Below, in pieces: positions 3,001 to 41,636 of a stretch of DNA of 64,000 nucleotides. The translations under genes and the position numbers were made by a program. This DNA is from Macrostomum lignano (lineage: Eukaryota), in NCBI GenBank assembly GCA_002269645.1, contig NIVC01000575.1, forward strand, positions 1-64,000, written 5' to 3'. Every line of letters begins with the position of its first letter. Positions within the stretch are counted from its first letter, which is position 1. Below the pieces are notes generated by a model that did not search any database, was not told where the DNA came from, and saw only the letters and a list, made by a program, of their open reading frames with translations.

Positions 3001-6000
3001 ATTCGAATATTGCTCGCGGGGGGGGGAGGGCGCGGCATTTCCCCAGTCCGTGGACTCCCGGGAAATAGAGCCAGATAGACTGGAAGCAAAACTGGAAATT
3101 GCGAGCATTCGAAATATTTGAAAGGCGTCAAATACAGAGGGATTTTCAGTAGAGGGAAAAAAGATTGTGTAGAGCTCAGCTCTTGAGTGTAACATTGGAT
3201 AGAAGGGGTACTTCCATGCCCGATTCTTCCAGTCCGGAATGCTCCGTTTCAGTGGTCCCCGGCCAGTCCCATATGACTTGCCAGGCTTCTTCTGTACGAC
3301 GTACGTGCGTGGACTCCTCGTCACAAAATTTGCTTAAGCCAACTCATTCACCCCCAACCTGACCTTGCCTTCCCAGGCCCCATGAGAAATCAGGGAGGGT
3401 TTCCACTGCCTGGCGAATTTACTCCCCTATTCTGAACTGATCCAACAGTTTCCTCCACCCCAGCATCTCCGTTTGATCATCCCGCTTTTTGCACCGACCG
3501 ATTGTAACTCCCAATCGTATTTCTTGGCTTTGATTGAAAGAAAAACTGTTGACATTTTTCTGATTGGCCTCATCAGCCCAGCTGTCTGAATCTGGGGCCG
3601 CTGATTTAACTGCAGTTATTACTGTTCCCGATTGAATTTCAAACACCTGAAGCTTCAGATTGAGCAGAAAAGAAATAAAAATTTCATAATGCGTAGAATA
3701 GCTTTTTGACAAGTAACTGGCCTCGTCAACTTTGCACCCTGACTTCCTGAATTCTCTACTCTCACCTCAGATATCCCTTTACTCCGAACCCAGCAGTCCT
3801 AGATATATACGAGAGTAGAGATCTCTCGTATGCTTACTCCGACCTTAAGTTTCAAAAATATTCCTCTCCTCCATCTTCAGTTATCCTCCGACATAGTGAA
3901 TCCAGCTCATGGCTGCAGGCCAGATGAGAGAAAAGAGAGAGGAGAGAAGAGAGAAAGTTAAGAAGAGACGCAAACCTTGAGCGGGCCGGGTTGCTGTTGT
4001 AAAGTTTCAAAGGACCGGGAGCCGGATAGAGAGGCTCCGCAGGCCGGAGTTTGCCGACTCCTGTCCTACGACGTATCCCCGCTGTACAACTTCAGTCTTC
4101 AGGTGTCTTAAATCTGAGGTAAGTATTTAGCTATTCCTCAGACTTCAGGTACTCCCACTTTGAATGCAGTTCCAGAGTTCGTACTGTCATTGTGATGATT
4201 CCAGATCTCCCAATCATAGCGATCTCACCGCCTCACCCATCATTCCGTTCCACTCGAGCTCCCCGCTGCCATCGGGGCTGGGCTCCTGGGCGCCGTACTT
4301 TCCGTCCTCAACCAGGTGCAGCTGCCAGTCGACACCCAGCTTGGCGAAGACCATCTCGGCCAAGTCAATGCAGAATCCGTGATAGCGCTGCCTGAAATCC
4401 GAGGCGTTCTCGCTGCCCTCGCGCAACATGACAAACGGCTCGTTGAGGATGCTGACCACCCGGATCACGGTGCCATTGCCGAGCCTGAGGCTCGCATCTG
4501 TTGTGTCGTTTGCGCCGCTAGCGCCGGACCGCCTTCGGTGCCGGTCGTTGGTGATGTTGAGGCCGCCGGCAGGGGTCCAGACTCCAATTGGTTGGGAGCG
4601 GTGCGGCGCGCCCATCAGGTCCATCACGCGGATGGTATCGGAGCCGCTGCTTGAAAGCCTCGAGGCAACGGCTTGGTGCAGGCGGTGGCGAAGCTCTCGA
4701 CGTTCAAGACTGTGACGTCGCTGGCTGCCGTCGCCCCGGATTTTTCGCCGACCAACTACTAAACCGACGTCGCCTCCGGGGCAGGACAGGTCTGGCCAGG
4801 TCAGGACAGTTGTTCTGCTGACGACATGATCGTCGCTTGTTGCCAAGCCGACCGAATTAGCGGCCTCCGCCAGGGCGGTCAGAGCTGATTGCATCGCCAG
4901 AACATCGTGCGACGGCGGGTTGAGATCCGGCCGGCCGTGGCCGAGAACGTAAGCGGCCGGCGGGATGGAACCGAAACGCCGGGAATAGCCGCTGGGGATC
5001 TGAGAGAGTTTGTAGCTGAACTGCCTGGATTTGCCCCTCGGATTACCGGCTGCTACAGAACTGAGACAATGAGAAGACAAACCAAGAAAACTGAGGAACC
5101 ACAAAACTGAGAAGCAAACTACGAGTAAAATGGAAGACCGAGTAAGGACACAACCGAGTAAAGAGACAACGTAGATGCATCTTTACAACGAGTAAAGATG
5201 CAACCGAGTAAAGACACGACCAAGTAAAGACACAACAGAGTAAGAACACAACCGAGTACAGACACAAAACAACTGAGTAAAGACACGCAACTGAGTAAAT
5301 TGACTCCCAAGACACAATCCAACCGTAAGCAAGCTAAAAAGCCGTACCGCCAGATCGAATCCGGTGATATTGCAGCCGCTGTAGATGAAGCTGCCCAGCT
5401 GCAGCTCCGACATGCCCAGCGCAGCAACGGCATAGTGATACTCGGGCCTATTCATGCCTAGCAGGGCCAGCTCTTCCAGCAGCAGCTGCACGCTGTGCAT
5501 TCCACCAACATCTACAGCCAACAGTCGACGCCGCGGATGCTGCCGAGTAAGCCTGGCGTCCAGACCGCGCAGCGCCGACCGAGTTCTCTCCAGCTGCGAT
5601 GGCCCGGCGGCCGCGCCACCCGTCGAAAATCGATACTCTCCCCGCGCTGCCAAATCCGGCGCTGTCGGCCTCGTCCTGTCGCTTCCGACGCCGGAGCGCC
5701 TCAGCGAGGCGAACACCCGACGGAAGCCGGCGTCGTCAGCGTAGACGTAGGAGAAATCCGTCCAGTTGAGGTAGGCCAGGAGGCTCTCAAACGCCGGCGC
5801 CAATTCGGGTAGCGGGCTGAGCCTGGTGCCCGGCAAGTCGGGAAAAGCCTGCCGCCAGGCGATGTAGAGCATGTCGTGCGCTCTGGCCCAGCTGGCGATG
5901 AGGCGGTCAGCCTCCGGACATACTGAGGCAAACAGGGCCGCGGCACCGGCTCTGGTGGCTGAGCAGAGCCTGGAGAGCAGGCTGTAGCCGCTTTGACTGA

Positions 6001-6208
6001 TGTTAGGCTCCAACGGGACGACTTTGACGACTCCGACGCTCGACGCGACGTCGGCAGCGACGCGCCTGAAGACAATCTCGGTGCCTGGCGGAGCCGAGCT
6101 GTCGTAGAAGAAGTAGATCGGAAATCTGGAACCTGCTGGCGCCGCCACTGCTGCTCCTGCTGCTGCGGTGGCGACAGAAACTATCAAGGCAAGGGTCAGC
6201 TGTTGCAT
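1..6208 (-). CDS. Ionotropic glutamate receptor, AMPA/kainate-like, 3' end beyond window start. Exons (-): 6208-5348, ~4999-4237, 1951-1636, ~913-569, ~49-<1. Two apparent 1-nt insertions in homopolymers (~613-616 and ~48-50).
   Basis: Signal peptide ([18 protein letters not shown]) and long ATD; S1 motifs [57 protein letters not shown]; M1; M2 loop [14 protein letters not shown]; M3 [15 protein letters not shown]; S2 start [10 protein letters not shown] at 49-20. GT/AG sites with compatible phases for the first three introns. Confidence 0.93.
312..475. repeat. Minisatellite, ~22-23-bp units (gatgtccatggaccaaacccacc and variants), in iGluR intron
   Basis: Direct tandem copies containing ccatgg visible at 312-475. 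Confidence 0.85.
2056..2575. repeat. 21-bp minisatellite (ctgaggtatctccaccccgac), ~24 copies, in iGluR intron
   Basis: Recurrent (t/a)aggtatctc at ~21-bp spacing. Confidence 0.9.
3905..4063 (+). mobile_element. Partial hAT-type MITE (right end), same family as 18010-18658
   Basis: Shares gagcgggccgg..tttcaaaggacc..gccggatag..caggccggagtttgc with 18560-18658; ends in gtttgccgactcctg, the near reverse complement of caggggtcggcaaac at 18010. Confidence 0.7.
5110..5300. repeat. Degenerate 16-19-bp tandem repeat (aaagacacaaccgagt) in iGluR intron 1
   Basis: Recurrent gagtaaaga motif. Confidence 0.75.
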
Positions 6209-6629
6209 CGGTGAAAAACTTCTGTTGAAATCTGGGGAACTGGGAACCCAATGGAGACTATGAGCTCACCAACTGAGGTTGGGACAAAATTTTGAGCATT
6301 TTCTTGGTTTAAAGCCAGTTTCCTGTCGCCTCCGGGCCTCTTTTTGCCTCCCTGATCCCGAGAGTGTTGCCAGGGCGCTTGAGTCATCCAATAGAACGAG
6401 TAAAGGGAGAGATTTTGCGCCCATTTGGCACGCAATTTTTATCCCTTAAAGGAGAAGTCATTAAAAATTGGGTCTACAGTGTTTCTCAGAGTCTCAGTGC
6501 AGTTGCAAAAGCAAGCCGCCGCTTCCGGACACTCAACTCGGGTTGTAAACCTGACATTCACCGAGCTGATTCGGATTTTTATGTGCTCAAGCAAATGTTT
6601 TGAAATGCTGTCCAGCCTCTCTTAAATCA

Positions 6630-7745
6630 TGTAGTTTACTGTCATCCTCTCCCTGATTCTGTAACTTACTGTCACTGTCTCCCTGATTCTGTAACTTACT
6701 GTCACTGTCTCCCTGATTCCGTAACTTACTGCCACCCTCCCTGATTCTGTAACTTTCTGTCACCGTCTCCCTGATTCTGTAACTTACTGTCACTGTCTCC
6801 CTGATTCCGTAACTTACTGTCACTGTCTCCCTGATTCTGTAACTTACTGTCACTGTCTCCCTGATTCTGTAACTTACTGTCACTGTCTCCCTGATTCTGT
6901 AACTTACTGTCACTGTCTCCCTGATTCTGTAACTTACTGTCACTGTCTCCCTGATTCTGTAACTTACTGTCACTGTCTCCCTGATTCTGTAACTTACTGT
7001 CACTGTCTCCCTGATTCTGTAACTTACTGTCACTGTCTCCCTGATTCTGTAACTTACTGTCACTGTCTCCCTGATTCTGTAACTTACTGTCACTGTCTCC
7101 CTGATTCTGTAACTTACTGTCACTGTCTCCCTGATTCCGTAACTTACTGTCACTGTCTCCCTGATTCTGTAACTGACTGTCACTGTCTCCCTGATTCTGT
7201 AACTTACTGCCACCCTCCCTGATTCTGTAACTTACTGTCACTGTCTCCCTGATTCTGTAACTTACTGTCACCGTCTCCCTGATTCTGTAACTTACTGTCA
7301 CTGTCTCCCTGATTCTGTAACTTACTGTCACTGTCTCCCTGATTCCGTAACTTACTGTCACTGTCTCCCTGATTCTGTAACTTACTGTCACTGTCTCCCT
7401 GATTCTGTAACTTACTGTCACTGTCTCCCTGATTCTGTAACTTACTGTCACTGTCTCCCTGATTCCGTAACTTACTGTCACTGTCTCCCTGATTCTGTAA
7501 CTGACTGTCACTGTCTCCCTGATTCTGTAACTTACTGCCACCCTCCCTGATTCTGTAACTTACTGTCACTGTCTCCCTGATTCTGTAACTTACTGTCACC
7601 GTCTCCCTGATTCTGTAACTTACTGTCACTGTCTCCCTGATTCCGTAACTTACTGCCACCCTCCCTGATTCTGTAACTTACTGTCACTGTCTCCCTGATT
7701 CTGTAACTTACTGTCACTGTCTCCCTGATTCTGTTATTTACTGTC
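6630..7745. repeat. 30-bp minisatellite (ctgattctgtaacttactgtcactgtctcc), ~37 copies, with recurring shorter gccaccctcc variant
   Basis: Near-perfect tandem copies; source of the spurious RIRETVTVSY and LQNQGDSDSK ORFs. Confidence 0.97.
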
Positions 7746-8267: not shown

Positions 8268-11200
8268 ATGGCGGACAACTTTCTCATTGAAGAGAAGATT
8301 GTGACGTTGCAGAAATCTGCGATGGAAAATGTCACCGTCATGGCTGGCATCGACAGAGGCAAGCGGCTCAGGCTCGATTAATTCAATTATTAGCCACTAT
8401 TTTACTTTTACGGTATACTGGCTGGGTTTAGGAATCCATTATATTATATGCATTAACCGTCCGACCCACCTTGTTGCATGCAGGCTGTTCCCTCACCAAG
8501 GTCCTCTTCGTCACTGCCGGAAACTCTGACGACACTTTCAAACTACACCTTGCACTCTTCAACAACACGCACTTTGAGGCCGGACTAGACTATCTGGCTA
8601 GCAAGGCCATCCTGCAGCGGGGAGAGGGTGGCAAACTGCACGTGACTGGCGTCGGATGCGACAGATATCGAGAGCTAATTCAGGAGAAATTGGGACTGGA
8701 GTAAGAATTATTGGGGCTGCTAATCAGCGGTTGACATTGAAACACCCACCCTACCTTCTCGGTTGGTTATGTCTCTCCTCCCACAGCCATTAAAACACCC
8801 ACCCTACCTTCTCGGTTGGTTATGTCTCTCCTCCCACAGCCATTAAAACACCCACCCCACTCTCTCGGTTGGTTTTGCCTCTCCTCTCACAGCCATTAAA
8901 ACACCCACCCACCCTCTCGGTTGGTTATGTCTCTCCTCTCACAGCCATTAAAACACCCACCCCACCCTCTCGGTTGGTTATGTCTCTCCTTCCACAGCCA
9001 TTAAAACACCCACCCCACTCTCTCGGTTGGTTATGTCTCTCCTCTCACAGCCATTAAAACACCCACCCCACCCTCTCGGTTGGTTATGTCTCTCCTCCCA
9101 CAGCCATTAAATCACGGTTGGTTGTACCTCGGGTCGTTGGCTAGCAGAACTTCATTGAAGGATTTGCTATTCTGGTTGCTATTACTGGCAGTCGAATTGC
9201 TGCCCGTCAAATGACGGTATCGAAAAATTAGTTGCAAACAATAGGTAAAACTGGGATTCTCAACTAATAAATACAAGCGTAGCTTTAGTAGCCAATCAGG
9301 TAATGGGATATCAGTCTTATCAGTCGGTTCTTGCACGGTTCACCGTCTTTAATTATTAATCCAGGATAAAATTATCCTGGCTTCAACTGAATTCTTAATT
9401 TAAATCTTACAGGAACAATTAGATAGTAATACTGCTTTCACACAATACTACTGACTAGCAGATGAGTAGCATAGAAGTAGTACGCGGACAATTATTACTT
9501 TCAAAAACAAAATAGCAGAACTGGCTTTCACAACGATAAAAAAATCTTGAAGACCAACTTTTGAAGCGAGAACAGGACGGTGAGATGAAACTGTTTGTGC
9601 TCCCCTGTCTGCCTGCTCTCAGGTTGGAATTCATCGACGAGTTCCTGTCGCAGACTCGCGGCGCCCACTGGCTGATCAAGAACCTGCCCATTGAGGAGCT
9701 CTGCTATCCGGAGACGGAGGCCGACCTCGGCCAAATCACTGGCAGGGCTGAGAACCCGCTGCAGGCCAACATGAACCAGCAGTTTCAGCTGAGCAGCGAG
9801 GATGTTGCCAGCGCGACCCCCTCCCTGCCCTGCCTATTCTGTTTCATTGGTTCCGCCGGTGGCGTCATCTTTGTGAGCGGGCTGGCAGGGCTCGGGAACA
9901 GTTGCCATGCATTCTGATGAATCTGGTCTTGCCTTATCAACTTTCATTTTGGCATCCTTAATTTGGAGCCCCGGATGCTAAATTAGCACTTACTTTTTTC
10001 AAGCTGAATGCCACTTAGTTTAGGTTCCTTATTTTGGGACGCTACGGACATATGAGGCTAGATAAAGAGGGGCGCTAGTCAGTCAGGTGATGTACACAAA
10101 CTCGTAAATCATTTGTGGTCCTAAATTTAAGATGAATAACTGCAACCACGAAGAGGGATTGTGTGTGGCTGTTAGTGCATATGCCTGTTTATCGTATAAA
10201 AGCCCACTACTCTTATCCGATGTCACTCATCTGAATAGTTTAAGAAGGGAGCCAGTCGAGGGCAACAGAGGAGGCTCGTGCCTTTTTGGTATCAAGGATT
10301 TCTGTACCGCAAGTCGTCGAATTATCTGTGAGGTGACTGCCGTCAAAATTTTCTGCGCGCGTCTGCCTGTTCGCGCTTATGTCAAATATCGTTGTAATTT
10401 TGCGGTGAAATTCCCTTCCCACAACTGAAATCCCAGCTGAAAGAGAACGGCGAATCCTACCTGGTCACGAGTCTCTGGATGGCCGGCAAGTCGTTCCTCG
10501 GCTTCGGCAAGATGCTGCTGGGCACCAGCAGCTACGACGAGATAATGCGGCTGGCCGAGCGCGGTCGCCGTGGCAACATCGACAACGAGGGCAGAGACCT
10601 GGTGCAGACCGGGTGGACGGGCCCTACGGCCGGATGCCCGCCAGCCTGCCGATCTTCCCGTTTGGCAAAGCTGTGGACCTGGAGCTGGAGAGTGAGCGAG
10701 CGCATGAGTCTTTGTTTTAGAGTCTCTTTGTTCGAGAGTCTTTGTTCGAGAGTCTGTTTGAGGTATTTGCTTAATAGTCCTTATTCGAGAGTCTGCTCGA
10801 GAGGCTTTGTTCTTGAGTCTTTGTTGTGGAGTCTATTTACGAGTCTTTGTTTTAGAGTATTTATTTGTGAGTCTTTGTTTGTGAGTCCATATACAAGAGT
10901 TTTTTGCTTGAGTGTCTTTGCTCGAGAGTCTTTGTTCAAGAGTCTTTTTCGGGAGTCTTTGTTCGCGAGTCCTTATTCGAGAGTTTTTGTTTGGGAGTCT
11001 TAATTCGCGAGTCTTTGTTCGCGAGTCTAGGTTTAGGATCTTGCTTTTCGGAACTAGTTATAGCAGGGACTTCTAAGAAATGCAATCAGATGACTGGAAG
11101 TAATCAAACACTGCCCCCAATTTACACGCTAGTTGTTTAGATGGTCATGCCAAGATGGTCATGCCAATTCTTCTGATTCCTGAGCACCAACAGGTACGCG

Positions 11201-15282: not shown

Positions 15283-15812
15283 TGTCTGAGTCGGATGCTT
15301 CAGTGCTTGAGTTGGATGCATCAGTGCCTGAGTCGGATACACTAGTGTCTGATTCGGATGCATCAGTGTCTGATTCGGATGCATCAGTGCCTGAGTCGGA
15401 TACACTAGTGTCTGATTCGGATGCATCAGTGCCTGAGTCGGATACACTAGTGTCTGATTCGGATGCATCAGTGCCTGAGTCGGATACACTAGTGTCTGAT
15501 TCGGATGCATCAGTGTCTGATTCGGATGCATCAGTGCCTGAGTCGGATACACTAGTGTCTGATTCGGATGCATCAGTGCCTGAGTCGGATACACTAGTGT
15601 CTGATTCGGATGCATCAGTGCCTGAGTCGGATACACTAGTGTCTGATTCGGATGCATCAGTGCCTGAGTCGGATACACTAGTGTCTGATTCGGATGCATC
15701 AGTGCCTGAGTCGGATACACTAGTGTCTGATTCGGATGCATCAGTGCCTGAGTCGGATTCACTAGTGTCTGATTCGGATGCATCAGTGCCTGAGTCGGAT
15801 GCTTGAGTTGGA
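15283..15812 (+). repeat. 42-bp (2 x 21-bp) minisatellite tgattcggatgcatcagtgcctgagtcggatacactagtgtc
   Basis: Tandem copies; source of the spurious SDASVPESDTLV ORF. Confidence 0.95.
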
Positions 15813-16077: not shown

Positions 16078-16190
16078 CTGATCCAACTCAGACACTGGTG
16101 CATCCGACTCAAGCACTGAAGCATCCGACTCAGGCAATGAAGCATCCGACTCAAGCACTGAAGCATCCGACTCAAGCACTGAAGCATCCA
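16078..16190 (-). repeat. 21-bp repeat (gcatccgactcaagcactgaa), inverted relative of the 15283-15812 array
   Basis: Reverse complement ttcagtgcttgagtcggatgc matches the upstream array unit. Confidence 0.85.
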
Positions 16191-16995: not shown

Positions 16996-17001
16996 TTTAT
17001 T
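16996..17001 (-). terminator. Polyadenylation signal AATAAA of the secreted-peptide gene
   Basis: tttatt on the + strand, ~85 nt downstream of the stop at 17086. Confidence 0.55.
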
Positions 17002-17085: not shown

Positions 17086-17481
17086 TTAACGCCTCTGCCA
17101 GAGCCAGTGCCAGCGCCGGGGCGGGTCCGGCGAGCGGCCAGATCGCTCGTGCTTGAGGGCAAACTTCAGATAGTTGAACAGTGGAATGTAGGAGCGCTTC
17201 TTCACCAGTTCGTCTCCGGCCTCGACGTCGGAGTCTGCGGGATATTCAACCGGGTTGGAGTTCATTAATAAGCTGCTTACTGGCTGCATTAATGAACTGA
17301 TAGCGTGAGAAAGTGGATTCAGCTTACCTTTGTTGGCAGGATGCTTCAAGTCTGTCTCGTCGGGGTCTTCAACGGGGCTTCTGCCGCGGCAAGGATGGGC
17401 CGAAGCGGCATAGACAGCAGCAGCGACAGTCAGGAATAGCAGCAGAAGCTGCGCAATGCTCAGTTTTTGCTTGGCTGCCAT
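17086..17481 (-). CDS. Secreted peptide precursor (neuropeptide/hormone- or antimicrobial-like), ~115 aa. Exons 17481-17328 and 17279-17086 (48-nt in-frame intron).
   Basis: Signal peptide MAAKQKLSIAQLLLLFLTVAAAVYAASA; acidic pro-region; KKR cleavage site; basic C-terminal 35-mer. Donor AAG|GTAAGC and acceptor CCAG; upstream TATA box and downstream AATAAA. Confidence 0.8.
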   Translation of the reverse strand: MAAKQKLSIAQLLLLFLTVAAAVYAASAHPCRGRSPVEDPDETDLKHPANKGKLNPLSHAISSLMQPVSSLLMNSNPVEYPADSDVEAGDELVKKRSYIPLFNYLKFALKHERSGRSPDPPRRWHWLWQRR

Positions 17482-17555
17482 GCTCTTCTTCTGTTTTCCA
17501 AATTGTTTCTGCAGTCAGCTCTGGTTGCGGTCCTGACTCTGCCGCTCGGAGCCGG

Positions 17556-17563
17556 CTTTTATA
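17556..17563 (-). promoter_or_regulatory. TATA box (TATAAAAG) of the secreted-peptide gene
   Basis: cttttata on the + strand, ~80 nt upstream of the ATG at 17481. Confidence 0.7.
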
Positions 17564-18009: not shown

Positions 18010-18658
18010 CAGGGGTCGGCAAACTTTTTCACCTCAGAGACCAGATAGAGAATCTACGAGCTAGATCATTGCTGCGGGCCGGAGAGGAAGAGGGAATAGG
18101 AGAGAAGAGGAGAGAGGATATAAGAGATAAGAAGAGATGAGAGCGAAAATAAAAAGAGATAAAAGAGGAGAGGAGAGGAAAGAGATGAGAGGCCAGAGGA
18201 AAGGATAGGATGGAGAGGAGAGGAGAGAAAAGAGAGGAGAGAGATAAGAGAAGAGAAGAGAGGGATGAGATGAGAGAGGAGAGAGAGGAGAGGAGAGAGG
18301 ACAGGAGAGAGGAGAGGAGAGAGGAGAGGTGGGAGGCGAGATGAAAAATGCGATGAGAGAAGAGATGAGAGAGGAGAGGAGAGAGGAGAGGAGAGAGGAA
18401 AGAAGAGATGAGAGGAGAGATGAAGGGTGGGAGGAGAGGTGAAAAATGCGATGAGAGAGAAGATAAGAGAGGAGAGGAGATAAGAGAGGAGATGAGATAA
18501 GAGAGGAGAGAGGAGAGGAGAGATGAAGGGAGAGGAAAAGTGAGAAGAGAAGACACAAACCCTGAGCGGGCCGGATTGCTATTGTGAAATTTCAAAGGAC
18601 CCGAGGGCCGGATAGATAATCTTTGCGGGCCGCATGTGACCCTCAGGCCGGAGTTTGC
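18010..18658 (+). mobile_element. hAT-type MITE with internal AG-rich expansion; right TIR partly deleted
   Basis: Left TIR caggggtcggcaaac; right end gtttgc followed by ttaaga, matching the left flank ttttaaga; body shared with 3905-4063; ~480 bp of (gagag)n-like sequence inside. Confidence 0.7.
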
Positions 18659-18777
18659 TTAAGAGTTTGTGAAGAATTTAATCACATCGGTGCTTTCTGG
18701 TGGTCAAGTTTGGCTAAGGTTATACAAGGTTTCTAGTGAGATGTGCCCAGCTTTGTGCCCAACAAGAGACAGGGGTG

Positions 18778-19332
18778 CCCACCAAGGAGATTGGGGCGCC
18801 AACCAAGGAGATTGGGGCGCCAACCAAGGAGATTGGGGCGCCAACCAAGGAGATTAGGGCGCCAATCTAGGAGATTGGGGCGCCAACCAAGGAGATTGGG
18901 GCGCCAACCAAGGAGATTGGGGCGCCAACCAAGGAGACTGGGGCGCCAACCAAGGAGATTGGGGCGCCAACCAAGGAGATTGGGGCGCCAACCAAGGAGA
19001 TTGGGGCGCCAACCAAGGAGACTGGGGCGCCAACCAAGGAGATTGGGGCGCCAACCAAGGAGATTGGGGCGCCAACCAAGGAGATTGGGGCGCCAACCAA
19101 GGAGACTGGGGCGCCAACCAAGGAGATTGGGGCGCCAACCAAGGAGATTGGGGCGCCAACCAAGGAGATTGGGGCGCCAACCAAGGAGATTGGGGCGCCA
19201 ACCAAGGAGATTGGGGCGCCAACCAAGGAGATTGGGGCGCCAACCAAGGAGATTGGGGCGCCAACCAAGGAGATTGGGGCGCCAACCAAGGAGATTGGGG
19301 CGCCAACCAAGGAGATTAGGGCGCCAATCAAG
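18778..19332. repeat. 21-bp minisatellite accaaggagattggggcgcca, ~26 copies
   Basis: Near-perfect tandem array; the PRRLGRQ and WRPNLLG ORFs are artefacts. Confidence 0.97.
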
Positions 19333-20029: not shown

Positions 20030-21075
20030 TGTCCGTCTTAGTGTCTGCCTGTTTTACTGTCTTAGTGTCTGTCTGTCTTACTGTCTTAGTGTCTGTCTGT
20101 CTTACTGTCTTAGTGTCTGCCTGTCTTACTGTCTTAGTGTCTGTCTGTCTTACTGTCTTGGTGTCTGCCTGTCTTACTGTCTTAGTGTCTGTCTGTCTTA
20201 CTGTCTTAGTGTCTGTCTGTCTTACTGTCTTAGTGTCTGTCTGTCTTACTGTCTTGGTGTCTGTCTGTCTTACTGTCTTAGTGTCTGTCTGTCTTACTGT
20301 CTTGGTGTCTGCCTGTCTTACTGTCTTAGTGTCTGTCTGTCTTACTGTCTTAGTGTCTGTCTGTCTTACTGTCTTAGTGTCTGTCTGTCTTACTGTCTTA
20401 GTGTCTGTCTGTCTTACTGTCTTAGTGTCTGCCTGTCTTACTGTCTTAGTGTCTGTCTGTCTTACTGTCTTAGTGTCTGCCTGTCTTACTGTCTTAGTGT
20501 CTGTCTGTCTTACTGTCTTAGTGTCTGTCTGTCTTACTGTCTTAGTGTCTGTCTGTCTTACTGTCTTGGTGTCTGCCTGTCTTACTGTCTTAGTGTCTGT
20601 CTGTCTTACTGTCTTAGTGTCTGTCTGTCTTACTGTCTTAGTGTCTGTCTGTCTTACTGTCTTAGTGTCTGTCTGTCTTACTGTCTTAGTGTCTGTCTGT
20701 CTTACTGTCTTAGTGTCTGTCTGTCTTACTGTCTTAGTGTCTGTCTATCTTACTGTCTTAGTTTCTGTCTGTCTTACTGTCTTAGTGTCTGCCTGTCTTA
20801 CTGTCTTAGTGTCTGTCTGTCTTACTGTCTTAGTGTCTGTCTGTCTTACTGTCTTAGTGTCTGTCTGTCTTACTGTCTTAGTGTCTGTCTGTCTTACTGT
20901 CTTAGTGTCTGTCTGTCTTACTGTCTTAGTGTCTGCCTGTCTTACTGTCTTAGTGTCTGTCTGTCTTACTGTCTTAGTGTCTGTCTGTCTGTCTGTCTGT
21001 CTGTCTTACTGTCTTAGTTTCTGTCTGTCTTACTGTCTGACTGTTTGTCTGTCTGTCTGTCTGTCTTATTAGTGT
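20030..21075. repeat. 24-bp minisatellite cttagtgtctgtctgtcttactgt, ~42 copies, decaying into (GTCT)n
   Basis: Tandem array; the 353-aa and 347-aa ORFs are artefacts. Confidence 0.97.
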
Positions 21076-23490
21076 CTTTCTTAGTGACTTAGTGTCGAGA
21101 ACGAACCTTTCCGCCTGTAAGAAGTAGGACGCTGCACTTGATTTTCTTAGAATTGAGCTGGAGGCCGGTAAGGAGGGCCTCCTTGCGGCTCCTTGACAAA
21201 CCTAAATCGAAACAATTTGTCATATTGCTAGTGCATTTAATATACTCTCAAGAAAAAGGATTTTTTCCACCGAATTTGTCTATGGTAAAACCTGTACATG
21301 TCAGGTCTCGATGAGGGTGATGTTTCGAGACATTAGAAATTTTGGCACTAGTTAAAACAAATCGCTACTGGTTTCTATACAAAATACATGCAGCTTCAGA
21401 TCTGCCCCCCCCCCCCGGTAACCAAACCCAGAAGTTTGACGCCCGCCAGTATTCACGCTGTTCTGCAAGCTGTGACATATTTCTCATGCTATACTATACT
21501 TTACGGCAGCTACTATTGACACTACATGTTATATCTATAAGTCCCTATTAAGATCATGCTGCATATTGGGGCTGAATATGCGACAGGAATGGGAGGTCAG
21601 AAAACTCAGTGATGATTACATATTGTAGTTTAACGTGCGGTAGTGATGCAATAGCAGGCCCCATCTACAACAGGCAAACCGCCCAGAAATGCTTAACAAA
21701 TGTGTAGCAGCTCGAAAATTGAATATAATCTGACTAATTTCAGAATTTTTAATTCAAAGTTCATTCGGCATAAATAAATTGGTAAGGCTCTCGTTGGATA
21801 TATCAATTCGATTAGAAACTACTGCATTAGGCGAAATCTCATCCTAGTGCCGCAGTTCATTGTAACAGATCTACAATAAACCACTCATTGTCTTAGGCTT
21901 AAACCATACTTTTTAAGCTGAGGAGCTTTCGAAATTAAACCGAAGCGCTTGATTTAACGTGCATCATGATGTATCGTTTAATGGTTGTGAGACAAACGCT
22001 ACGAATCATTCAGGTTTTATGAAGTTAACTCAATAGTACAATAAAGCTACTTATTTGATGCATTTAGATTTTATTTAAACGAATAAACGTACTCTACGAA
22101 GGTTTTCGTCGTCATTAAGACAAATTGCAAAGAACAAACGCATCGAATAAAGTAACAATACCCCAGTAAATTTGGCTTTCATGTGTGCCTTTTTCATTCC
22201 AGGACAGAATCAGTGAGGCTGCAGATCATACACATACCTACCTCAATGAGAGACAAATCATTTTTAGTATATTTAGATACGTAGGATTCACTCCCTTTCT
22301 ACTGTAGCTGAGAGTTCGCGCTTGGCCCAAAGCATGACAATTTTAAAAAGTTAGTAACATTATAACAAAAGTATTAGGCAAAAGTAGGAACGATTGAAAC
22401 TAGAAAAAGATACAAAACATTTCAAATTTTTTTAGCTATGAAAAATGAAAATTTTGCATTTTTACACTTTTCTGTTAAATCGGTTTTTAATACTATCTGT
22501 CGCTAAACAAAAATTTAACTTGTAAAATACTGTCTTTTTATAAAACAGTACTTTAGCTTCAGCTTTACTTTAGCTTCACGATGCTGTTTCTAAGCTTGTT
22601 TGTTGATATTGTAATCTTTTAGTCTCACTCCAATAAGTTGTTTTATGTCTAGTTATTTCTAATTATAGCTTAAAACCCGATTTTATCCTGTTGGATTAAA
22701 TATATCGAACAGTTAGTTTGAACTGCTTGTGCAGTAGAAGTAATTGTTACTTGGATATTTTTCCGTATTCTATGGATTGAAAGAAACTACTTTATATTTA
22801 TCTAAACACAGTGTTGAAATGCTGTTTGTTTAGTGTTCATAAAGATAAAAAAACTGAAATAGCACCAAATGAATATAATTTTATTGTGTTGCTAACACAA
22901 TGATTCATACTAGCACGAGTCAAGCAACGCATTGCAATATTTAGCAATAAATAAAAAGCCGAAGATGTTCAAAGCAGAAATATGCACTGCAGTATTATTT
23001 TTATTTATAGCTCGTTACCAGATAAAGAAATATATTTATTTTATTTATAATTCATTCTACAACAATGTTTACTTAATGAACATTTTTATATTTGTTCTTA
23101 ACATAAATAAACAATTAGTGTTTATAAAATTTTGAGCTTATTTTTATTCATATAAAGATTTTCATTCAGATTAAAATATTTTATTTATAGTTAGAAGTCC
23201 ATCTATACAAAGCATCCATTTATCAAAATAAATATGCATAATTAAAAAGACTTTTGTTAAACAGAGAAGCTTCATTTTATACAATAGTTCCTTGGCATAC
23301 AGTGACCATGTAATAAAAATAACTATGTATTAAAAAGTATGCATATATAATTAACTTTTTAAGAGCTTTAGGTCTTATGCAACATGTATCTTACCAATAA
23401 ATATCTAAACATGTTATTTTTGCTCACTAAAATGCAGTTCCTAAAAATACAGACAAACTAATATTTTTTAATGCTTTGACTGTTCATGAT

Positions 23491-26400
23491 ATGGCAACAA
23501 AGACCCAAGCCTTCGCTGGTGGAGGGTCATCGTCTCTGCCTCCTGGTGGCCTTTCTCTGACCGAAATCTCACAGAAGCTGGAGAATCAGAAAATCCCCAT
23601 AGTTACGCACATCATCAGTGACGAGGACATTGGCAATGTTGTCGGTGAGAAGCTGCAAACAGTTGACCTGGAACGCGTGCTCAAGGTGCTCACGGATCCG
23701 CACTACGCAGGTCTGTATGACCGGCACGTGATGGCAATTGAACGTCTTCTGCGCCACTACAAGCAAGGCTTCCTTATGAAGGACCTTGTGCAGGTGCGCC
23801 GAATTCTTAACATCTGCGCAGATCGCATCGAGGAGGGTCTGGTCTGCTACGTGGAGCCCCTGGTTGACTGTCTGTGCGTCTGCGCGCTGCCCTTCCTCAT
23901 GGAGAAGGCATCAGACGAGCTTGCTTACCGTCAGATCAGCGTAGAGACCGCATCTCAGCTCGCTTTTCTCATGCGCGTCGACGTCAGCCGAGTCCGACTG
24001 CAGATCTGTCGGACGCTGGCGCAGATCTACGACGGCGAGCCGCCGCCACAAGACGTCAGGGATCACAAACCAGCTGGGAGAAAGTGAGTAGCTTAGGAAT
24101 GCTTTATTGAGCGGTATGGCTAGTTTATATATATGTTCCTATTCTTTCTCACTCCCCAGATACAACCAGGCCATCTGTGAGGAGAGCGACATCTCTGAGA
24201 CGCTGGTTCGAACCCTTAAGCTTTTGGACAAAGACCTGACAGTTCGCCTGGCGGTCATCAGTTTGCTACAGAAGCTGTCGGGTAACTCTACCCGCTGCTG
24301 CATCCAGATGCTCAGCGTCAACGCCGCCTACACTCTGTGCAGCCGTATGACAGACCCGGATCCGTCCGGTGAACTGCTGTTCCGCTCGGTTGAGATCCTC
24401 TGGAACCTGATGCAGCATGGCGATTCTGAGCAAGTTGCCAAGCAGCTTGCCTGTCAGGAGTGCGTCGCTCAACTGCGCGAGGCTTTTGTCTATCTGCTGC
24501 CAAGGACATTTTCCGTGTTCGACCGTCAGTTAAGGAACGACGTTCTGGTGTTGGTGCAGCTCCTGGCCGCTACCGACTGTCGGGCGCCGTTCATCGAGGT
24601 CGGCTTTCTCAAGCAGTTGACTCTGTTCGCAACCTTCGAGGAGGTCAAGAGTCACAGTCCACTGGTCAGGAACCTGAAACTGTCGAAGAACCACGAGGAT
24701 TTTGAACTCAAGAAGCTGCTCATAAGCACGCTCGTCAGCCTATCCAGCGATCCCTGTGCCCTGCCTGTTCTGTCTGAAGGCCACTTCATGCTGGCTCTGC
24801 TCTCCTATGTGAAGCCGAACGAGCCAACAAGCAAACCGAGAGAGCTGCCGCCGGCCTACGTGGAGGAGCTGCAGCTGCTGGCTTTGTCCGCCCTTGCTAC
24901 CGTGGGACCGAAGATGCAAGCTGACTTCGTCAGCTGCAACGGCTGCAACCGGCTTCTGGAATTGCTCTTCTGGTGCACGGAGGCCAGCGACGACTATCTC
25001 GGCTACGGCAACGCCTTCCACGGCGCAGGGGGCCGCGGCAGCAAGCGGGCCCAGATGCGGCGCACCTTGCGAGCGATCTCGGCAATGGTGACCACCAACA
25101 ACCCGGACATCCTGGCCGACTTTGTTGACCAAGATGCTATCGGTGCCCTAAGCGAGATTCTGGCCTCTTCTGTGTCGGCCGGGAACCGAACCGGACAAGC
25201 TGCAACAGCCGTAGTGAATGACGACGACACCATCGACTTGGAGATGAAGCGCGAGATGCTGGGCATCCTCAGCGGTCTCTGCGAGAACAGTCTGCACAAT
25301 AAAGACCTGTTCGGCCCGTCTGGTGTGGCTACGCTAGTGCAGTTCTTGCGCACGGACCCGGGGCTTCTGAGCTCTGGTCTTGGTCACTACCAGCTCGTTA
25401 TTGGTGCCATCGACGCTGTATGGTGCTGCGTGGTCGGCTCTTACACCACGGAGGACTGCTTCCTTGAACGAGAGGGTGTGTATCTGCTGCTGGACTTGCT
25501 GGAACGTTGCCCGTCGGATTTGCACAGCCTCATTCTTGGCGTGCTTCTCGATCTCAGCGAGAACGAGAAAACTCTGCCGCACTTGAAGACCTGGAAAGGC
25601 GGCCGCGAGGTGACGGCTCCGCATCTGTTCTGCGCGTTGTGGCGCGACACCGAAGCCAGCATTGGTTGTCCGCGCCGGCCAGACGGCTCCATCGGTGACC
25701 TGCTGTCTCCACTGATGGGCGACGCCCAGCGTAAGCAGCTGGTGACGCCGCAGCCGGCCAACTGGCCGAGCCGATCGATCGTTGAAGTCGCTGAGAACGT
25801 GCGCGCCAAGATCTATGCTCTGTTCTACCGGATCGGCTTTGTCGACCTGCCGGGCATCAATGCTGAAGATCACGTGACTCTGACGCTGATCGAGCGCTAC
25901 CTGGACTACAAGCTTGGCGAGGTGTGGGACGAGGTGCAGCGAGAGCTGGAGCTGGAGCAGGTGCGGCCTGTCACGCCAGACCGGGAGGCACTGGACTGGA
26001 TCAACAAGTGCACGGAGCAGGAGACACTTCTGGTTGCCAAGACCCAGTCGGAGCTCATGGACGCCAAGCGGGATCAGGAAGTCTCGGAAGAGCAGGCGCT
26101 ATACTCGGAGCTTCGCGAGGACCACCGCCAGAAGGAGAAAGCGATTAATGACTTCAGCGATTTTGTAGCGCGAACCTCGGACTACTCAAAGCTGCGCGAG
26201 GCAAAAACACGCCAGCTAGCATCGATTGAAGCGTCTCGCATTGTGCCGCTACAGCAGGACGGGGCAGCGTTCCACAGCACCGAGCTGGTCAACCTGCAGG
26301 CTACGGTAAGTCGGAAGGCATAGCAGTATAGCAGTTAAAACTTAAACCCTGAACTTAATAGAATAACCATCGACAACAAAGGTAGAAAGAAGGTCGTGAC

Positions 26401-29810: not shown

Positions 29811-30517
29811 ATTACTCTCTAGTGTGTAGTTTTGAAAGTTAATTATAAAAAGGAAATAGATGAGAGTAAGCCCATATTACAGATTCAAAGAAATCAGGTT
29901 AAGGGGTTCAAATTTGCAAGGTCCTAAGTGTGCAGTTTTCAGAAAAGTGTACCTGCCCCAGCCTGAAGCATTTAACTCTAACAGAAAATAGGCCAAAGGT
30001 TCCAAGTGGGCTAGTTAGCTAATTTGAAAAGAAGCTGCAGATGCAGTGAGTGTATATACAATAAAACTCAAAAGACTAAAAAATACTAAAAAAACAGTAA
30101 AAACTTTTTCATAGGTAGTATACACGGTTCAACTCAGACTCGGACAGTTCAAATTGGACTACTCATACTTTCCAAATGCGAACTCGCTAATCCACTGGCT
30201 GTCTTAGAGCGTCTTGCACCGCGGCCATCTTAAAATAAGCATTCAAAGCTGATTTGGCGGCTTCTGCAGTTCCTTTTACTGTCTGCCTCTCCAGCTCAAT
30301 TTTTTGCACGAATCCGCTTTACCGGGCAGTCAGATTGGGAAGAAATGATGATGCGGGAGGCTCTAGGGGAAGAGAGACGGGTCTGGAAAAAGCCGACCGC
30401 ATAGCTTCATTTTGCGCGCATTCAGACAAGAGCCCAGCCGGTCGGAACTGGTCTAGCATCGTCGTGACAGCAGTGTACAACAACGACAACAGCAACAACC
30501 ACTCTTCCCAGCTCGAT

Positions 30518-30686
30518 ATGTCACTCCAAGGCGCAGCCGCCGGTGTCTTAACAGAAGCCGGAAACGATGAAAGCGACCCCCACAATCTGCACTATTATTC
30601 GCCAATGTACAAGGCTGGAATTAGCGGCGAAGCTGACGCAATCTGGGTGCTGACCTCGGCCTTCATCATCTTCACAATGCAGAGCG
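30518..30686 (+). CDS. amt: Amt first exon A (N-terminus + TM1 copy A)
   Basis: MSLQGAAAGVLTEAGNDESDPHNLHYYSPMYKAGISGEADAIWVLTSAFIIFTMQSG; phase-1 donor G|GTTCGT. Confidence 0.8.
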
Positions 30687-33600: not shown

Positions 33601-35688
33601 CAACTGCGGCTCAACCTTCGGCATCAGTGGCGAAAAGTGGAAACTTGCGGCAAGGTTTGCGGCTTTATATTTTTTACTCTAATTTCCTTCTGAATACCAA
33701 ATACAAGACAGAAACTGGTTAACCTAAGCGACTTCTGATACTCGTACAAGTATAGCTTGTATAGCTTTTATTTGTCGAAGTTTGGGAATCTGAAAATACG
33801 TTTAGCACGGGAGCGTTTTCTACTCTAATTTCATATCTTGCAATGACATCCGACTTAAAAACTCCATGTCCCTTAATTTCATACTTCTGAAAATTTACTT
33901 CCCTATAACACCTACATCTGTATCCAGATATTTTAAGGCATGCAAGACAAAGCAACTTCATATTCCCTATTTTTGCACGCTATTGTATGGCACAGTGATA
34001 CGACACTTTTCAATTGTCCCATCAAAAATCAAGTTCTGAAGTCAAATGACCACTTTTGGAATTGTAAAGTCTGGGGCTATAAAAACACCCCCGTAATCAC
34101 AGGTCAACAAGTTCAGTGAGAAACATTAAGTGTAAACCATCACCGTATCTCAACCGTATGTAGATCTGCAGTCTCCACAATCATTGCTTCAATGGGCGGC
34201 GGCATGGTTGGCATGATATTCAGTTACCTGACTCGCCGACGGAAGTTTCACATCAGCCTAATCGTGAATAGCATCTTGGCTAGTCTGGTGGCCATCACAG
34301 GTGCGATTCACATGCTTTTTGCTACTGTATAGTTTGACAACCAGTGTATAAAAATGGCAAGGTTATCCATTATCTGTTTTACCCGAATTTCATCAAAAAT
34401 GCAGCGATGTGTGCGCTGGCAGAGCCCTGGCAGGGCTTCCTCATTGGTGTGGTGGGCGCCCTTCTGGCATGCCTAACCGAGAATGTGGTCCTCAAGCTGC
34501 AGATCGACGATCCAGTTGGTAGGTTAGGTATTGCTAATGAATGCTATGCATTGCGATCGTACATCTGATGCCGGACAAAATAACTCGTACTAAGCAAACA
34601 AACCTTTCAGGAGTGATTGCGGTACACTTCTCTGCGGCGGTGTGGAGCTTGCTCACACCTGGCCTGATGGCGCACCAGGATCCAGATTGGTCTGTGCTTC
34701 GAATCACCACTAGACACGACGGACTCTTTTATGTGAGTTAAGCTATTGTACAATTAAGAGAAGTACAGCGTTGAAAAATGTTCATCTCTTAAAAATTTAG
34801 GGTGGCGGCTTCAAATTGCTAGGCATCCAGACTGTCGCCGTACTCGCCATAGTTGGCTGGACGGCTGTGACATCATTCCTACTTTTAAAGGCTATCGACC
34901 TCATCATGGGCCTGCGCGTGTCCATTGAGCACGAAGAGCTCGGAGCTGATCTGGTTGAACACGACATCGGCGCCAGCCTGATGTTCGACAAGCGCACTCA
35001 GTCGCTGGTGCCGCCACGCGAGGAATCGGTGGCAGCGGCGATGGCGGCGGCTGCTACGGCAGCAGCAGCCGTTGGCGAGTTTCGTGGCGCCAACACGCGC
35101 AGCCTCGGTCAGTTGATGAAGAAGCGCAGCAGCCAGCGTCAGCGCCGCCGTCAGCGATGGCGCCCACCAGGCTTTGAACCCGTCTCCACTGTCGCAATAG
35201 AGAACTCCACGTCCACTGGCGCTGAAGAAGAAAATAATGGCGAAAGAGACGAGGACTATCGTGCTGGATGCTGCCAATGCTGCTGGTCGCGAACTTCAGC
35301 AAAGAAAACAGACAGACCCAACGGGGACAGCAACGGCGTTCGCTTATCGGAGCTGTCATTTCACCGGCGGAGAGGCCACATGGCCTCTTCACCATCTGTG
35401 ACAAGAAATGCCAGCACCACAGCTGCAACAGGCTCAGGGTTGCTTCATAGGCGCATCAAGGAGCATGGAAATCCGGGCGGTTCGTTGAGCCTCGGCAGCC
35501 GATTCTGGGGTCCCACACCAAAGACGGCTAAGACGCATAGAAGTCGCCGCCGAGACAGCGACCGCCTAACAGTTGCATGTAGCAACAGCACTAACTGGGC
35601 GTCAACTTCTTCAACGTCCGCAGTGACTTTCTTCATTCAAGACGGTGAGAGTCGCGTGGATCAACCCGAAAATCTAGTGCAGGCTTGA
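30518..35688 (+). CDS. amt: Ammonium transporter (Amt family). First exon A 30518-30686 or B 32296-32395; shared exons 32571-33114, 33583-33654, 34164-34300, 34405-34518, 34611-34732, 34801-35688.
   Basis: DAIW..FTMQSG|FGLLESG..KNEVNIMVKN, FQASFATTSTTIVSGAMAER, AHWMW, DIAGAGPVHLVGG (His1), WWGWLGFNCGST, IDDPVGVIAVH (His2), LGADLVEH; all splice phases are consistent. Confidence 0.95.
30790..30869 (+). mobile_element. Helitron 3'-end fragment (hairpin + CTAG|T)
   Basis: gccccctcgttggggggc-gcagattg-ctag|t, nearly the same as the 3' end at 52160-52187. Confidence 0.65.
32296..32395 (+). CDS. amt: Amt first exon B (N-terminus + TM1 copy B)
   Basis: MSSTATRTPLVRELQSDAIWILSSTFSIFTMQSG; phase-1 donor G|GTGAGA. 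Confidence 0.82.
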
Positions 35689-41530: not shown

Positions 41531-41636
41531 TGGCAGCTTATTGGAATAAATAACATTAAAATGAATTGGTTCAAAAACCATCTTTTTGTTTTCACTGTTT
41601 TACAAATCTTCCAAATAAACTACATGTACTGAATAC

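What the first reader, a model, noticed from the sequence alone, without database searches (positions are those of the whole stretch)
17086..17563. Compact, apparently uncharacterised secreted peptide gene: acidic propiece, KKR, cationic Trp/Arg-rich 35-mer
Seen: TATA box, signal peptide, acidic spacer (VEDPDETD, EYPADSDVEAGDE), KKR, then SYIPLFNYLKFALKHERSGRSPDPPRRWHWLWQRR-stop (net charge about +6), and a polyA signal. Established: signal + anionic propiece + dibasic site + cationic peptide is the layout of many antimicrobial peptides and toxins, and RRWHWLWQRR resembles Trp/Arg-rich AMPs (lactoferricin RRWQWR, indolicidin ..WRR). Alternatively SGR could yield an amidated 18-mer ending HERS-NH2, and RR..RR could release WHWLWQ, which recalls yeast alpha-factor WHWLQ. 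I cannot match it to a known neuropeptide family. Best candidate here for a new signalling or defence peptide system.
Basis: partly seen in the sequence, partly recalled or inferred. Interest (0 to 1): 0.78.

Follow-up and report, generated by a model that had tools for sequence, protein, structure and literature searches.

The report
Orphan flatworm secreted-peptide precursor gene
This is a small, probably real, two-exon gene of the flatworm Macrostomum lignano that encodes a 100-residue secreted precursor laid out like a peptide-hormone gene, but it has no relatives anywhere and no evidence of expression or function, so it is a plausible yet ordinary candidate.

Summary
The described features are present, on the minus strand:
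- TATA box 17563-17556 and ATG at 17481.
- A 28-residue signal peptide and an acidic propiece.
- KKR, then a +6 35-mer ending at the stop codon 17088-17086.
- AATAAA at 17001-16996.

A 93-nt GTAAGC..CAG intron (17327-17235) splits the gene, so the product is 100 aa.

Codon usage, GC3 and the exon/intron GC contrast support a real coding gene. The only database relative is a 74-aa uncharacterised Macrostomum lignano UniProt entry, which is identical and shows the same exon junction.

Searches of about 15 billion proteins, Pfam, PDB, the literature and contig collections found nothing else. Three genomic copies in assembly Mlig_3_7 all keep the reading frame intact. They are too similar to test for selection, and GenBank annotates no gene at this locus.

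Three resemblances were tested and failed:
- The neuropeptide F (NPF) lead scores at chance.
- The peptides are no more amphipathic than shuffles.
- The WHWLWQ tail is encoded by a short hexanucleotide repeat.

Best reading (about 0.4): a lineage-restricted prohormone-type precursor cut at KKR and RSGR, giving SYIPLFNYLKFALKHERS-NH2. Defence peptide, other gland secretion and non-gene all remain open. Interest is modest.

The parts
17556..17563 (-). TATA box (TATAAAAG), 75 nt upstream of the ATG
   Evidence: The motif alone is at chance frequency in the window; only its position and strand relative to the ORF are meaningful.
17482..17555 (-). Inferred core promoter and 5' UTR. It contains no upstream ATG, has an in-frame TGA 12 codons before the start, and holds a CTGCAG that could serve as a trans-splice acceptor (speculative).
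   Evidence: Read directly. The transcription start is inferred, not shown.
17328..17481 (-). Exon 1 coding part: residues 1-51 plus the first base of codon 52. The signal peptide is residues 1-28 (17481-17398), with predicted cleavage at ASA|HP.
   Evidence: The exon junction is confirmed by UniRef A0A1I8HCB4.
17235..17327 (-). Intron of 93 nt, GTAAGC...CCCGCAG, phase 1. It is 44% GC against 60% in the exons. It is in frame and stop-free, so a retained intron would add 31 residues to the propiece.
   Evidence: For comparison, the CFAP69 intron at 24084-24159 is 76 nt, GTGAGT..CAG and AT-rich.
17086..17234 (-). Exon 2 coding part: residues 52-100 plus the stop codon TAA (17088-17086).
17194..17202 (-). 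KKR (residues 63-65), the predicted prohormone-convertase site.
   Evidence: Sequence. Cleavage is inferred from general processing rules.
17140..17193 (-). Predicted 18-mer SYIPLFNYLKFALKHERS (residues 66-83). It is followed by G84-R85 (17139-17134) within the motif R-S-G-R, so C-terminal amidation is predicted. Calculated [M+H]+ is 2225.22.
   Evidence: AlphaFold2 on the single sequence gives a helix at 70-81 with low confidence.
17089..17133 (-). C-terminal tail SPDPP-RR-WHWLWQ-RR (residues 86-100).
17096..17117 (.). Imperfect hexanucleotide tandem repeat (TGCCAG x3.7, 81% matches). On the minus strand it encodes RWHWLWQ.
   Evidence: Tandem Repeats Finder, score 30
16996..17001 (-). AATAAA polyadenylation signal, 85 nt after the stop codon.

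Best explanation
This is a lineage-restricted, two-exon gene of Macrostomum lignano that encodes a 100-residue preproprotein of the peptide-prohormone kind.

Proposed steps, all inferred:
1. The signal peptide (residues 1-28) takes the protein into the secretory pathway and is removed after Ala28.
2. The rest (72 residues) has no globular fold. It is cut by a prohormone convertase after KKR65, and probably after R-S-G-R85.
3. Carboxypeptidase and the amidating enzyme then convert Gly84 into a C-terminal amide. This gives SYIPLFNYLKFALKHERS-NH2, plus the acidic propiece and a Trp/Arg-rich C-terminal peptide SPDPPRRWHWLWQ.
4. The 18-mer would act as an extracellular signalling peptide on an unknown receptor.

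Shown here: the gene anatomy, the coding signal, the exon junction, the orphan status, and three intact genomic copies.
Inferred: secretion, every cleavage, amidation and the signalling role.
For: Gene anatomy and coding signal:
- Anatomy is read.
- Codon usage is frame-specific, GC3 is 0.70, and exon/intron GC differs.
- An independent M. lignano gene model has the identical exon 1/exon 2 junction.
- The N-terminus has the n/h/c regions of a signal peptide, and it is the only hydrophobic segment.
- The propiece is predicted disordered, with short helices at 70-81 and 92-98.

Processing sites:
- The sites KKR|S and RSGR|S have Ser at P1'. The second has Arg at P4 and Gly at P2. These are the standard contexts for convertase cleavage and amidation (my knowledge of processing rules, as used by NeuroPred).
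- Charges are segregated around KKR.

Context in flatworms:
- M. lignano has a PC2 homologue expressed in the nervous system, and its knock-down is lethal (PMC4490696).
- In the planarian Schmidtea, 51 prohormone genes of this size and layout are known. Nineteen of them are orphan 'secreted peptide prohormones', and most are expressed in neurons (PMC2953531).

Genomic copies:
- All three copies in assembly GCA_002269645.1 keep the ORF. Exon 2 is unchanged. The most divergent copy has 2 changes in 303 coding nt against 32 events in 1598 non-coding nt.
Against: - No transcript, peptide or expression site could be examined.
- The GenBank annotation of Mlig_3_7 calls no gene at this locus in any of the three copies.
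- The only gene model (UniProt, 74 aa) stops at ...FNYL, before most of the proposed peptide. The reason is unknown; the three Mlig_3_7 copies have no stop codon there.
- No homologue exists in about 15 billion proteins. Conservation of the peptide against the spacer is therefore untestable.
- The paralogue contrast is not significant (Fisher p = 0.07).
- The 18-mer matches no known neuropeptide family. The NPY/NPF profile scores at chance and Pfam finds nothing.
- The same layout fits defence peptides and other secreted products.
Confidence: 0.4

Rival explanations
1. It is a host-defence (antimicrobial) or toxin-like peptide precursor. The anionic propiece neutralises a cationic C-terminal peptide. 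That peptide is released at KKR and acts on microbial or prey membranes through its Trp/Arg-rich tail.
For: - Propiece -6 against 35-mer +6, with significant charge segregation.
- Three Trp and four Arg lie in the last ten residues.
- A TATA-type promoter fits a strongly expressed, tissue-specific gene.
- The signal / acidic propiece / KR / cationic peptide layout is shared with frog-skin and other antimicrobial peptide precursors (my knowledge).
Against: - The helical hydrophobic moments of the 18-mer, the 35-mer and the tail are at shuffle level.
- The SPDPP linker breaks the 35-mer in two.
- The Trp pattern is a by-product of a short hexanucleotide repeat.
- There is no similarity to any antimicrobial family in Pfam or PDB.
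- Carboxypeptidase trimming of the terminal RR would lower the charge.
- No paper found describes antimicrobial peptides in Macrostomum.
Confidence: 0.15
2. It is another kind of rapidly evolving secreted product, for example a prostate or seminal-fluid, adhesive, mucus or rhabdite component. It would be secreted as a small disordered protein, with or without cleavage at KKR.
For: - It has a signal peptide and no homologues.
- In M. lignano, 31 of 76 prostate-limited transcripts had no BLAST hit, and 38 of 65 translated ones had signal peptides (PMC5977470). Orphan small secreted proteins are therefore common in this species' glands.
Against: - The sequence is not in that paper's supplementary files.
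- The clustering of basic processing motifs (KKR, RSGR, RR, terminal RR) in the C-terminal third, and the lack of any fold, fit a processed precursor better than a structural secretion.
Confidence: 0.2
3. It is not a functional protein-coding gene. On this view it is a fortuitous open frame between tandem-repeat arrays, picked up by an ab initio predictor.
For: - There is no gene at the locus in the GenBank Mlig_3_7 annotation in three copies.
- The UniProt model is truncated at 74 aa.
- There is no homologue anywhere.
- The locus sits between satellite-like arrays, and its tail contains a micro-repeat.
- The copies are too similar for their intact ORFs to mean anything.
Against: - The codon-usage signal is frame-specific, GC3 equals that of real genes, and the intron is AT-richer than the exons.
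- Donor and acceptor are canonical and preserve the frame.
- TATA box, first-ATG start, a signal peptide exactly at the N-terminus and AATAAA are all in the right order and spacing on one strand.
- A 100-aa ORF sits at the usual lower length limit of ORF callers used on transcriptomes (my knowledge). Its absence from that annotation is therefore weak evidence.
Confidence: 0.22

Closest known systems
Planarian 'secreted peptide prohormones' (Smed-spp-1 to -19) and other flatworm prohormone genes (Collins et al. 2010, PMC2953531)
   Same: - Size about 70-150 aa.
- N-terminal signal peptide and a spacer.
- Peptides bounded by KR/KKR/RR, with Gly-basic amidation signals.
- Often no relatives outside a narrow lineage.
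   Different: - There is no sequence similarity to any of them.
- Those genes were validated by cloning, in situ hybridisation and mass spectrometry. None of that exists here.
Flatworm neuropeptide F / NPY superfamily (e.g. Smed-npy-10, Smed-npy-8)
   Same: - A single peptide of about 30-36 residues follows a KR site near the C-terminus of a short precursor.
- PLFN sits at the same offset after the cleavage site as in Smed-npy-10.
- An NYL[K/R] motif resembles the NPF core.
   Different: - There is no C-terminal RPRF/RPRY-Gly-basic motif.
- The intron is in the propiece, not in the Arg codon before the last aromatic residue.
- A profile of nine planarian NPY peptides scores the 35-mer at chance, with 29% of shuffles doing as well.
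Cationic antimicrobial peptide precursors with anionic propieces; Trp/Arg-rich peptides (indolicidin, tritrpticin, lactoferricin B)
   Same: - Signal, acidic propiece, basic site and a cationic peptide.
- A cluster of Trp and Arg at the end.
   Different: - No homology.
- No amphipathicity above chance.
- The Trp cluster comes from a hexanucleotide repeat.
- No activity or expression data.
Orphan secreted prostate-limited transcripts of M. lignano (Weber et al. 2018, PMC5977470)
   Same: Same species; small predicted secreted proteins without homologues.
   Different: The sequence is not among the material held for that paper, and the expression site of this gene is unknown.

Membership tests
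Peptide prohormone / neuropeptide precursor (generic class) | N-terminal signal peptide and no other membrane segment | tested here: met
   The n-region is MAAKQK. The h-region of 17 residues reaches a Kyte-Doolittle mean of 2.83. The c-region is A-S-A|H. There is no other hydrophobic segment. This is heuristic; SignalP was not available.
Peptide prohormone / neuropeptide precursor (generic class) | Candidate peptides flanked by basic convertase sites, with a Gly-basic amidation signal | tested here: met
   KKR at 63-65, R-S-G-R at 82-85, RR at 91-92 and RR at 99-100. Actual cleavage is not shown.
Peptide prohormone / neuropeptide precursor (generic class) | Peptide region conserved more than the spacer among orthologues | not testable with these tools
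   No orthologue was found in any collection. The three paralogous copies differ by only 2 coding changes.
Peptide prohormone / neuropeptide precursor (generic class) | Expression in neurons or endocrine cells, and detection of the processed peptides | not testable with these tools
   No transcriptome, in situ or peptidomic data could be reached. M. lignano is not represented among the run-assembly (Logan) proteins of the collection.
Neuropeptide F / NPY superfamily | C-terminal (G)RPR[F/Y]-amide encoded as RPRF/Y-Gly-basic | tested here: not met
   The product ends ...WHWLWQRR-stop. The only Gly-Arg is followed by SPDPP, and no RPRF appears in other frames.
Neuropeptide F / NPY superfamily | Intron inside the Arg codon that precedes the C-terminal aromatic residue (Collins 2010, figure 2D legend) | tested here: not met
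   The single intron splits codon 52 in the propiece, 14 codons before the first residue of the peptide (codon 66).
Neuropeptide F / NPY superfamily | Sequence similarity to family profiles | tested here: not met
   An HMM of nine Smed NPY peptides gives -0.8 bits, and 29% of shuffles score at least as well. Pfam finds no family at E <= 1.
Cationic amphipathic / Trp-Arg-rich antimicrobial peptides | Net cationic mature peptide behind an anionic propiece | tested here: met
   +6 against -6. Only 346 of 20000 shuffles are as segregated.
Cationic amphipathic / Trp-Arg-rich antimicrobial peptides | Amphipathic arrangement of the mature peptide | tested here: not met
   Hydrophobic moment at 100 degrees is 0.26 for the 18-mer, 0.10 for the 35-mer and 0.48 for the tail. 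These are reached by 39%, 80% and 44% of shuffles. Non-helical Trp-rich peptides would escape this test.
Cationic amphipathic / Trp-Arg-rich antimicrobial peptides | Antimicrobial activity; expression at barrier tissues or induction by microbes | not testable with these tools
   This needs synthesis and assays.
Pigment-dispersing factor / cerebrin (considered because of the KR + amidated 18-mer layout) | Similarity to the PDH/PDF peptide profile | tested here: not met
   No Pfam-A family matched at E <= 1. The resemblance (L-[IF]-N-x-L...K) was recalled from memory and is weak.
Yeast alpha-factor | Tandem copies of WHWLQLKPGQPMY separated by KR-EA spacers in a fungal precursor | tested here: not met
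   There is one WHWL only, at the extreme C-terminus. It has no repeat units, the host is an animal, and there is no homology.

The most novel reading that the evidence does not exclude
The gene is expressed, and its products form a new Macrostomum-specific bioactive peptide system. This could be an amidated 18-residue neuropeptide with its own receptor, or a bifunctional precursor whose Trp/Arg-rich tail acts as a flatworm defence peptide. No such peptide has been described in free-living flatworms.
Probability: 0.12. Interest if true: 0.55.

Novelty: new member of a known kind. Interest (0 to 1): 0.3.

Why it matters
If it is expressed and processed, it would add a lineage-specific signalling or defence peptide to a regeneration and sexual-selection model animal that already has RNAi and transgenesis. 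It would also show that small peptide genes are being missed by that animal's current genome annotation. As it stands, it is one unvalidated candidate of a kind that flatworm genomes probably contain by the dozen.

Tried and rejected
**Homologue searches**
- Word-indexed search of 5.8 billion proteins and exhaustive phmmer search of 1.84 billion cluster representatives. Only the species' own 74-aa UniProt entry was found.
- Exact look-ups of the spliced and unspliced products and of the 74-aa entry. The spliced and unspliced products are not in the protein collection.
- Back-translated scans of JGI metagenome contigs and of prokaryote genomes found nothing.
- Pfam and PDB sequences gave nothing.

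**Literature**
- Searches for the peptide strings and the accession returned 0 papers.
- McVeigh 2009 was not held when looked up, and a search for the flatworm neuropeptide-discovery paper (Koziol 2016, recalled from memory) returned only papers that cite it.

**NPF lead**
- This came from a PLFN match in Smed-npy-10.
- It was rejected by the profile test, the C-terminus and the intron position.

**Resemblances recalled from memory**
- PDF, SIFamide (AYRKPPFNGSIF against SYIPLFNYLKF) and alpha-factor.
- None has statistical or structural support.

**Other tests**
- The amphipathic-helix test for the antimicrobial reading was at chance.
- No paralogue lies in the window.
- Selection test on the three Mlig_3_7 copies: the direction is as expected but there is too little divergence (p = 0.07).
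- The AlphaFold2 model is low-confidence (pLDDT 63), so no fold search was run.
- Rfam and tRNA scans of the window were empty.

Full report
**What is there**

The finding lies on the minus strand. Reading 17700 down to 16950 gives these features, in order:
- A TATAAAAG box at 17563-17556.
- 74 nt with no ATG, containing an in-frame TGA 12 codons before the start.
- ATG at 17481.
- An open frame of 131 codons ending in TAA at 17088-17086.
- AATAAA at 17001-16996.

Inside the frame is a canonical intron, GTAAGC...CCCGCAG, at 17327-17235 (93 nt, phase 1).
- Removing it keeps the frame and gives a 100-residue product: MAAKQKLSIAQLLLLFLTVAAAVYAASA | HPCRGRSPVEDPDETDLKHPANKDSDVEAGDELV | KKR | SYIPLFNYLKFALKHERS | GR | SPDPP | RR | WHWLWQ | RR.
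- Its 'EYPA' belongs to the intron, and the polyA signal lies outside its coordinates.

**Is it a gene?**

Codon usage was learned from the window's identifiable genes: CFAP69, an ASC/ENaC channel, an ammonium transporter and a glutamate-receptor-like gene.
- The spliced frame scores +0.17 bits per codon.
- All five other frames are negative.
- Only 1 of 29 other ATG-ORFs of at least 80 aa scores higher.
- GC3 is 0.70 against 0.73 in the training genes.
- The exons are 60% GC and the intron 44%.
- This matches the short AT-rich intron of the neighbouring CFAP69 gene (24084-24159).

The only protein in the databases that resembles it is UniRef A0A1I8HCB4, 'Uncharacterized protein', Macrostomum lignano, 74 aa.
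- It is 100% identical to residues 1-74 of my spliced product.
- It therefore uses exactly the junction K51|D52.
- That model stops at ...SYIPLFNYL, and I could not find out why.

The TATA motif by itself is at chance frequency.

**Organism and other copies**

The neighbouring CFAP69 gene is 99% identical to M. lignano proteins from GenBank assembly GCA_002269645.1.

I fetched the three CFAP69 loci of that assembly. Each carries the peptide locus about 6.5 kb upstream.

| Locus | Identity to the window | Differences |
|---|---|---|
| L003 | 100% | none; this is evidently the window's own copy |
| L001 | 99.9% | one base, at 17549 between the TATA box and the ATG |
| L002 | about 98% | coding changes are Y23H in the signal peptide and one synonymous change; exon 2 unchanged |

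- None of the three copies has a stop after Leu74.
- In L002 there are 2 events in 303 coding nt against 32 in 1598 non-coding nt.
- That contrast points towards constraint but is not significant (Fisher one-sided p = 0.07; for the 35-mer alone p = 0.12).
- The GenBank annotation calls no gene at the peptide locus in any of the three copies.
- Transcript support therefore rests only on the older automatic model.
- The protein collection holds no run-assembly (Logan) proteins of M. lignano, so the gene's absence there says nothing.

**Relatives**

There are none.
- An exhaustive phmmer search of 1.84 billion representatives of about 15 billion proteins returned only the UniProt entry.
- Pfam and PDB sequences returned nothing.
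- Metagenome and prokaryote contig scans returned nothing.
- Full-text searches for the peptide strings returned nothing.
- There is no paralogue in the window.

**Properties of the product**
- The N-terminus has a basic n-region, a 17-residue hydrophobic core and an A-S-A|H cleavage motif. It is the only hydrophobic segment.
- The propiece has net charge -6 and the post-KKR 35-mer +6. Only 346 of 20000 shuffles are as segregated.
- AlphaFold2 without an alignment gives a disordered propiece and short helices at 70-81 and 92-98, with low confidence (pLDDT 63). This fits a precursor rather than a folded domain.
- The helical hydrophobic moments of the 18-mer, the 35-mer and the tail are no higher than in shuffles.
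- The three Trp are clustered; 110 of 20000 shuffles place them as closely.
- The DNA explains that clustering. RWHWLWQ is encoded by an imperfect (TGCCAG)x3.7 tandem repeat at 17096-17117.
- The locus lies between large satellite-like arrays at 15283-15802, 16081-16189, 18100-18553, 18772-19332 and 20035-21062.
- The motif GRSP occurs twice, at residues 33-36 and 84-87, with different codons. 588 of 20000 shuffles contain any repeated 4-mer.

**A lead that failed**

Searching the planarian prohormone catalogue (PMC2953531) for fragments found PLFN in Smed-npy-10, at the same offset after its KR site. NYL[K/R] is also the core motif of flatworm NPF.

Three defining features of that family were then tested, and none is met:
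- There is no RPRF/Y-Gly-basic C-terminus.
- The intron is not in the Arg codon before the last aromatic residue.
- A profile of nine planarian NPY peptides scores the 35-mer at -0.8 bits, which 29% of shuffles equal or beat.

The resemblances to PDF, SIFamide, lactoferricin, indolicidin and alpha-factor are short and came from memory. None has support from Pfam or PDB.

**Most likely mechanism**

The best reading is a prohormone-type precursor.
- KKR|S and R-S-G-R|S are standard convertase contexts: Ser at P1', and for the second site Arg at P4 and Gly at P2. This rests on my knowledge of processing rules.
- They predict SYIPLFNYLKFALKHERS-NH2 ([M+H]+ 2225.22).
- Cleavage at RR|W is less likely, because bulky Trp at P1' is disfavoured (my knowledge). 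Free WHWLWQ is therefore improbable, and the tail would be SPDPPRRWHWLWQ.
- M. lignano has a neuronal PC2 whose knock-down is lethal (PMC4490696).
- Planarians have 19 orphan 'secreted peptide prohormones' of similar build (PMC2953531).

I put this reading at about 0.4. The rivals are:
- A defence peptide, about 0.15.
- Another orphan gland secretion, such as the many prostate-limited secreted transcripts of this species (PMC5977470), about 0.2.
- No functional gene at all, about 0.2.

**Verdict**

This is a plausible new member of a known kind, a lineage-restricted secreted peptide precursor. It has no evidence of expression, processing or conservation, and its most eye-catching motif has a mundane origin in a micro-repeat. 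Interest is 0.3.

Noticed in passing
window 17235-17327 (-): The 93-nt intron is a multiple of three and has no in-frame stop. Intron retention would therefore give a 131-aa protein with 31 extra residues in the propiece, and an unchanged signal peptide and C-terminal peptide.
   Followed up: partly
window 17382-17393 and 17128-17139 (-); residues 33-36 and 84-87: The motif G-R-S-P occurs twice (CRGRSPVEDP and RSGRSPDPP) with different codons. 3% of shuffles have any repeated 4-mer. If GR|SP is a processing site, an N-terminal HPCR-amide would also be released.
   Followed up: partly
UniRef A0A1I8HCB4 against window 17166-17168: The only database model of the gene ends at Leu74 (...SYIPLFNYL), although the window and all three Mlig_3_7 copies read on with AAG (Lys). 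The cause could be a contig end or an allele with a stop codon, and it remains unknown.
   Followed up: partly
L001, L002 and L003 (GCA_002269645.1 contigs NIVC01000851.1, NIVC01002522.1, NIVC01000575.1): Three copies of the whole region exist, as expected for this partly duplicated genome. Between the window and L001, the segment 15.8-19.5 kb is nearly identical, while the CFAP69 segment differs by 1-5%. This mosaic pattern suggests recombination or gene conversion between the copies.
   Followed up: partly
window 15283-15802, 16081-16189, 18100-18553, 18772-19332, 20035-21062; also 6587-7659: Large tandem-repeat arrays surround the gene. Their periods are 42/63, 21, about 12 (AG-rich), 21 and 24 bp, with up to 43 copies. 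They generate many long spurious ORFs on both strands.
   Followed up: partly
window 23476-26323 (+): CFAP69 (cilia- and flagella-associated protein 69) gene. Its ARM-repeat domain matches at E 1e-261, and it has a 76-nt intron at 24084-24159.
   Followed up: yes
window 4214-6208 (-): Exons of an ionotropic glutamate-receptor-like gene. The ligand-binding domain (Lig_chan-Glu_bd) matches at E 5e-16, and there is a weak ANF_receptor match.
   Followed up: partly
window 30254-35688 (+): Ammonium transporter (Amt family) gene in several exons. Pfam Ammonium_transp matches at 32624-33115 and 34816-34965.
   Followed up: partly
window 57974-59647 (-): Amiloride-sensitive sodium channel (ASC/ENaC/degenerin family) gene. 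It appears as one uninterrupted frame of 557 codons (E 2e-46).
   Followed up: partly
window 9561-9917 and 10479-11003 (+): The ORF at 9585-9914 has the highest codon-usage score in the window but no Pfam hit. The start of the next ORF gives a weak, sub-threshold match to Fumble (pantothenate kinase). These may be exons of one gene.
   Followed up: partly
window 40000-56000: An AT-rich stretch (31-37% GC, against 44-59% elsewhere) with no ORF of 150 aa or more. It may be a gene desert or a long intron.
   Followed up: no
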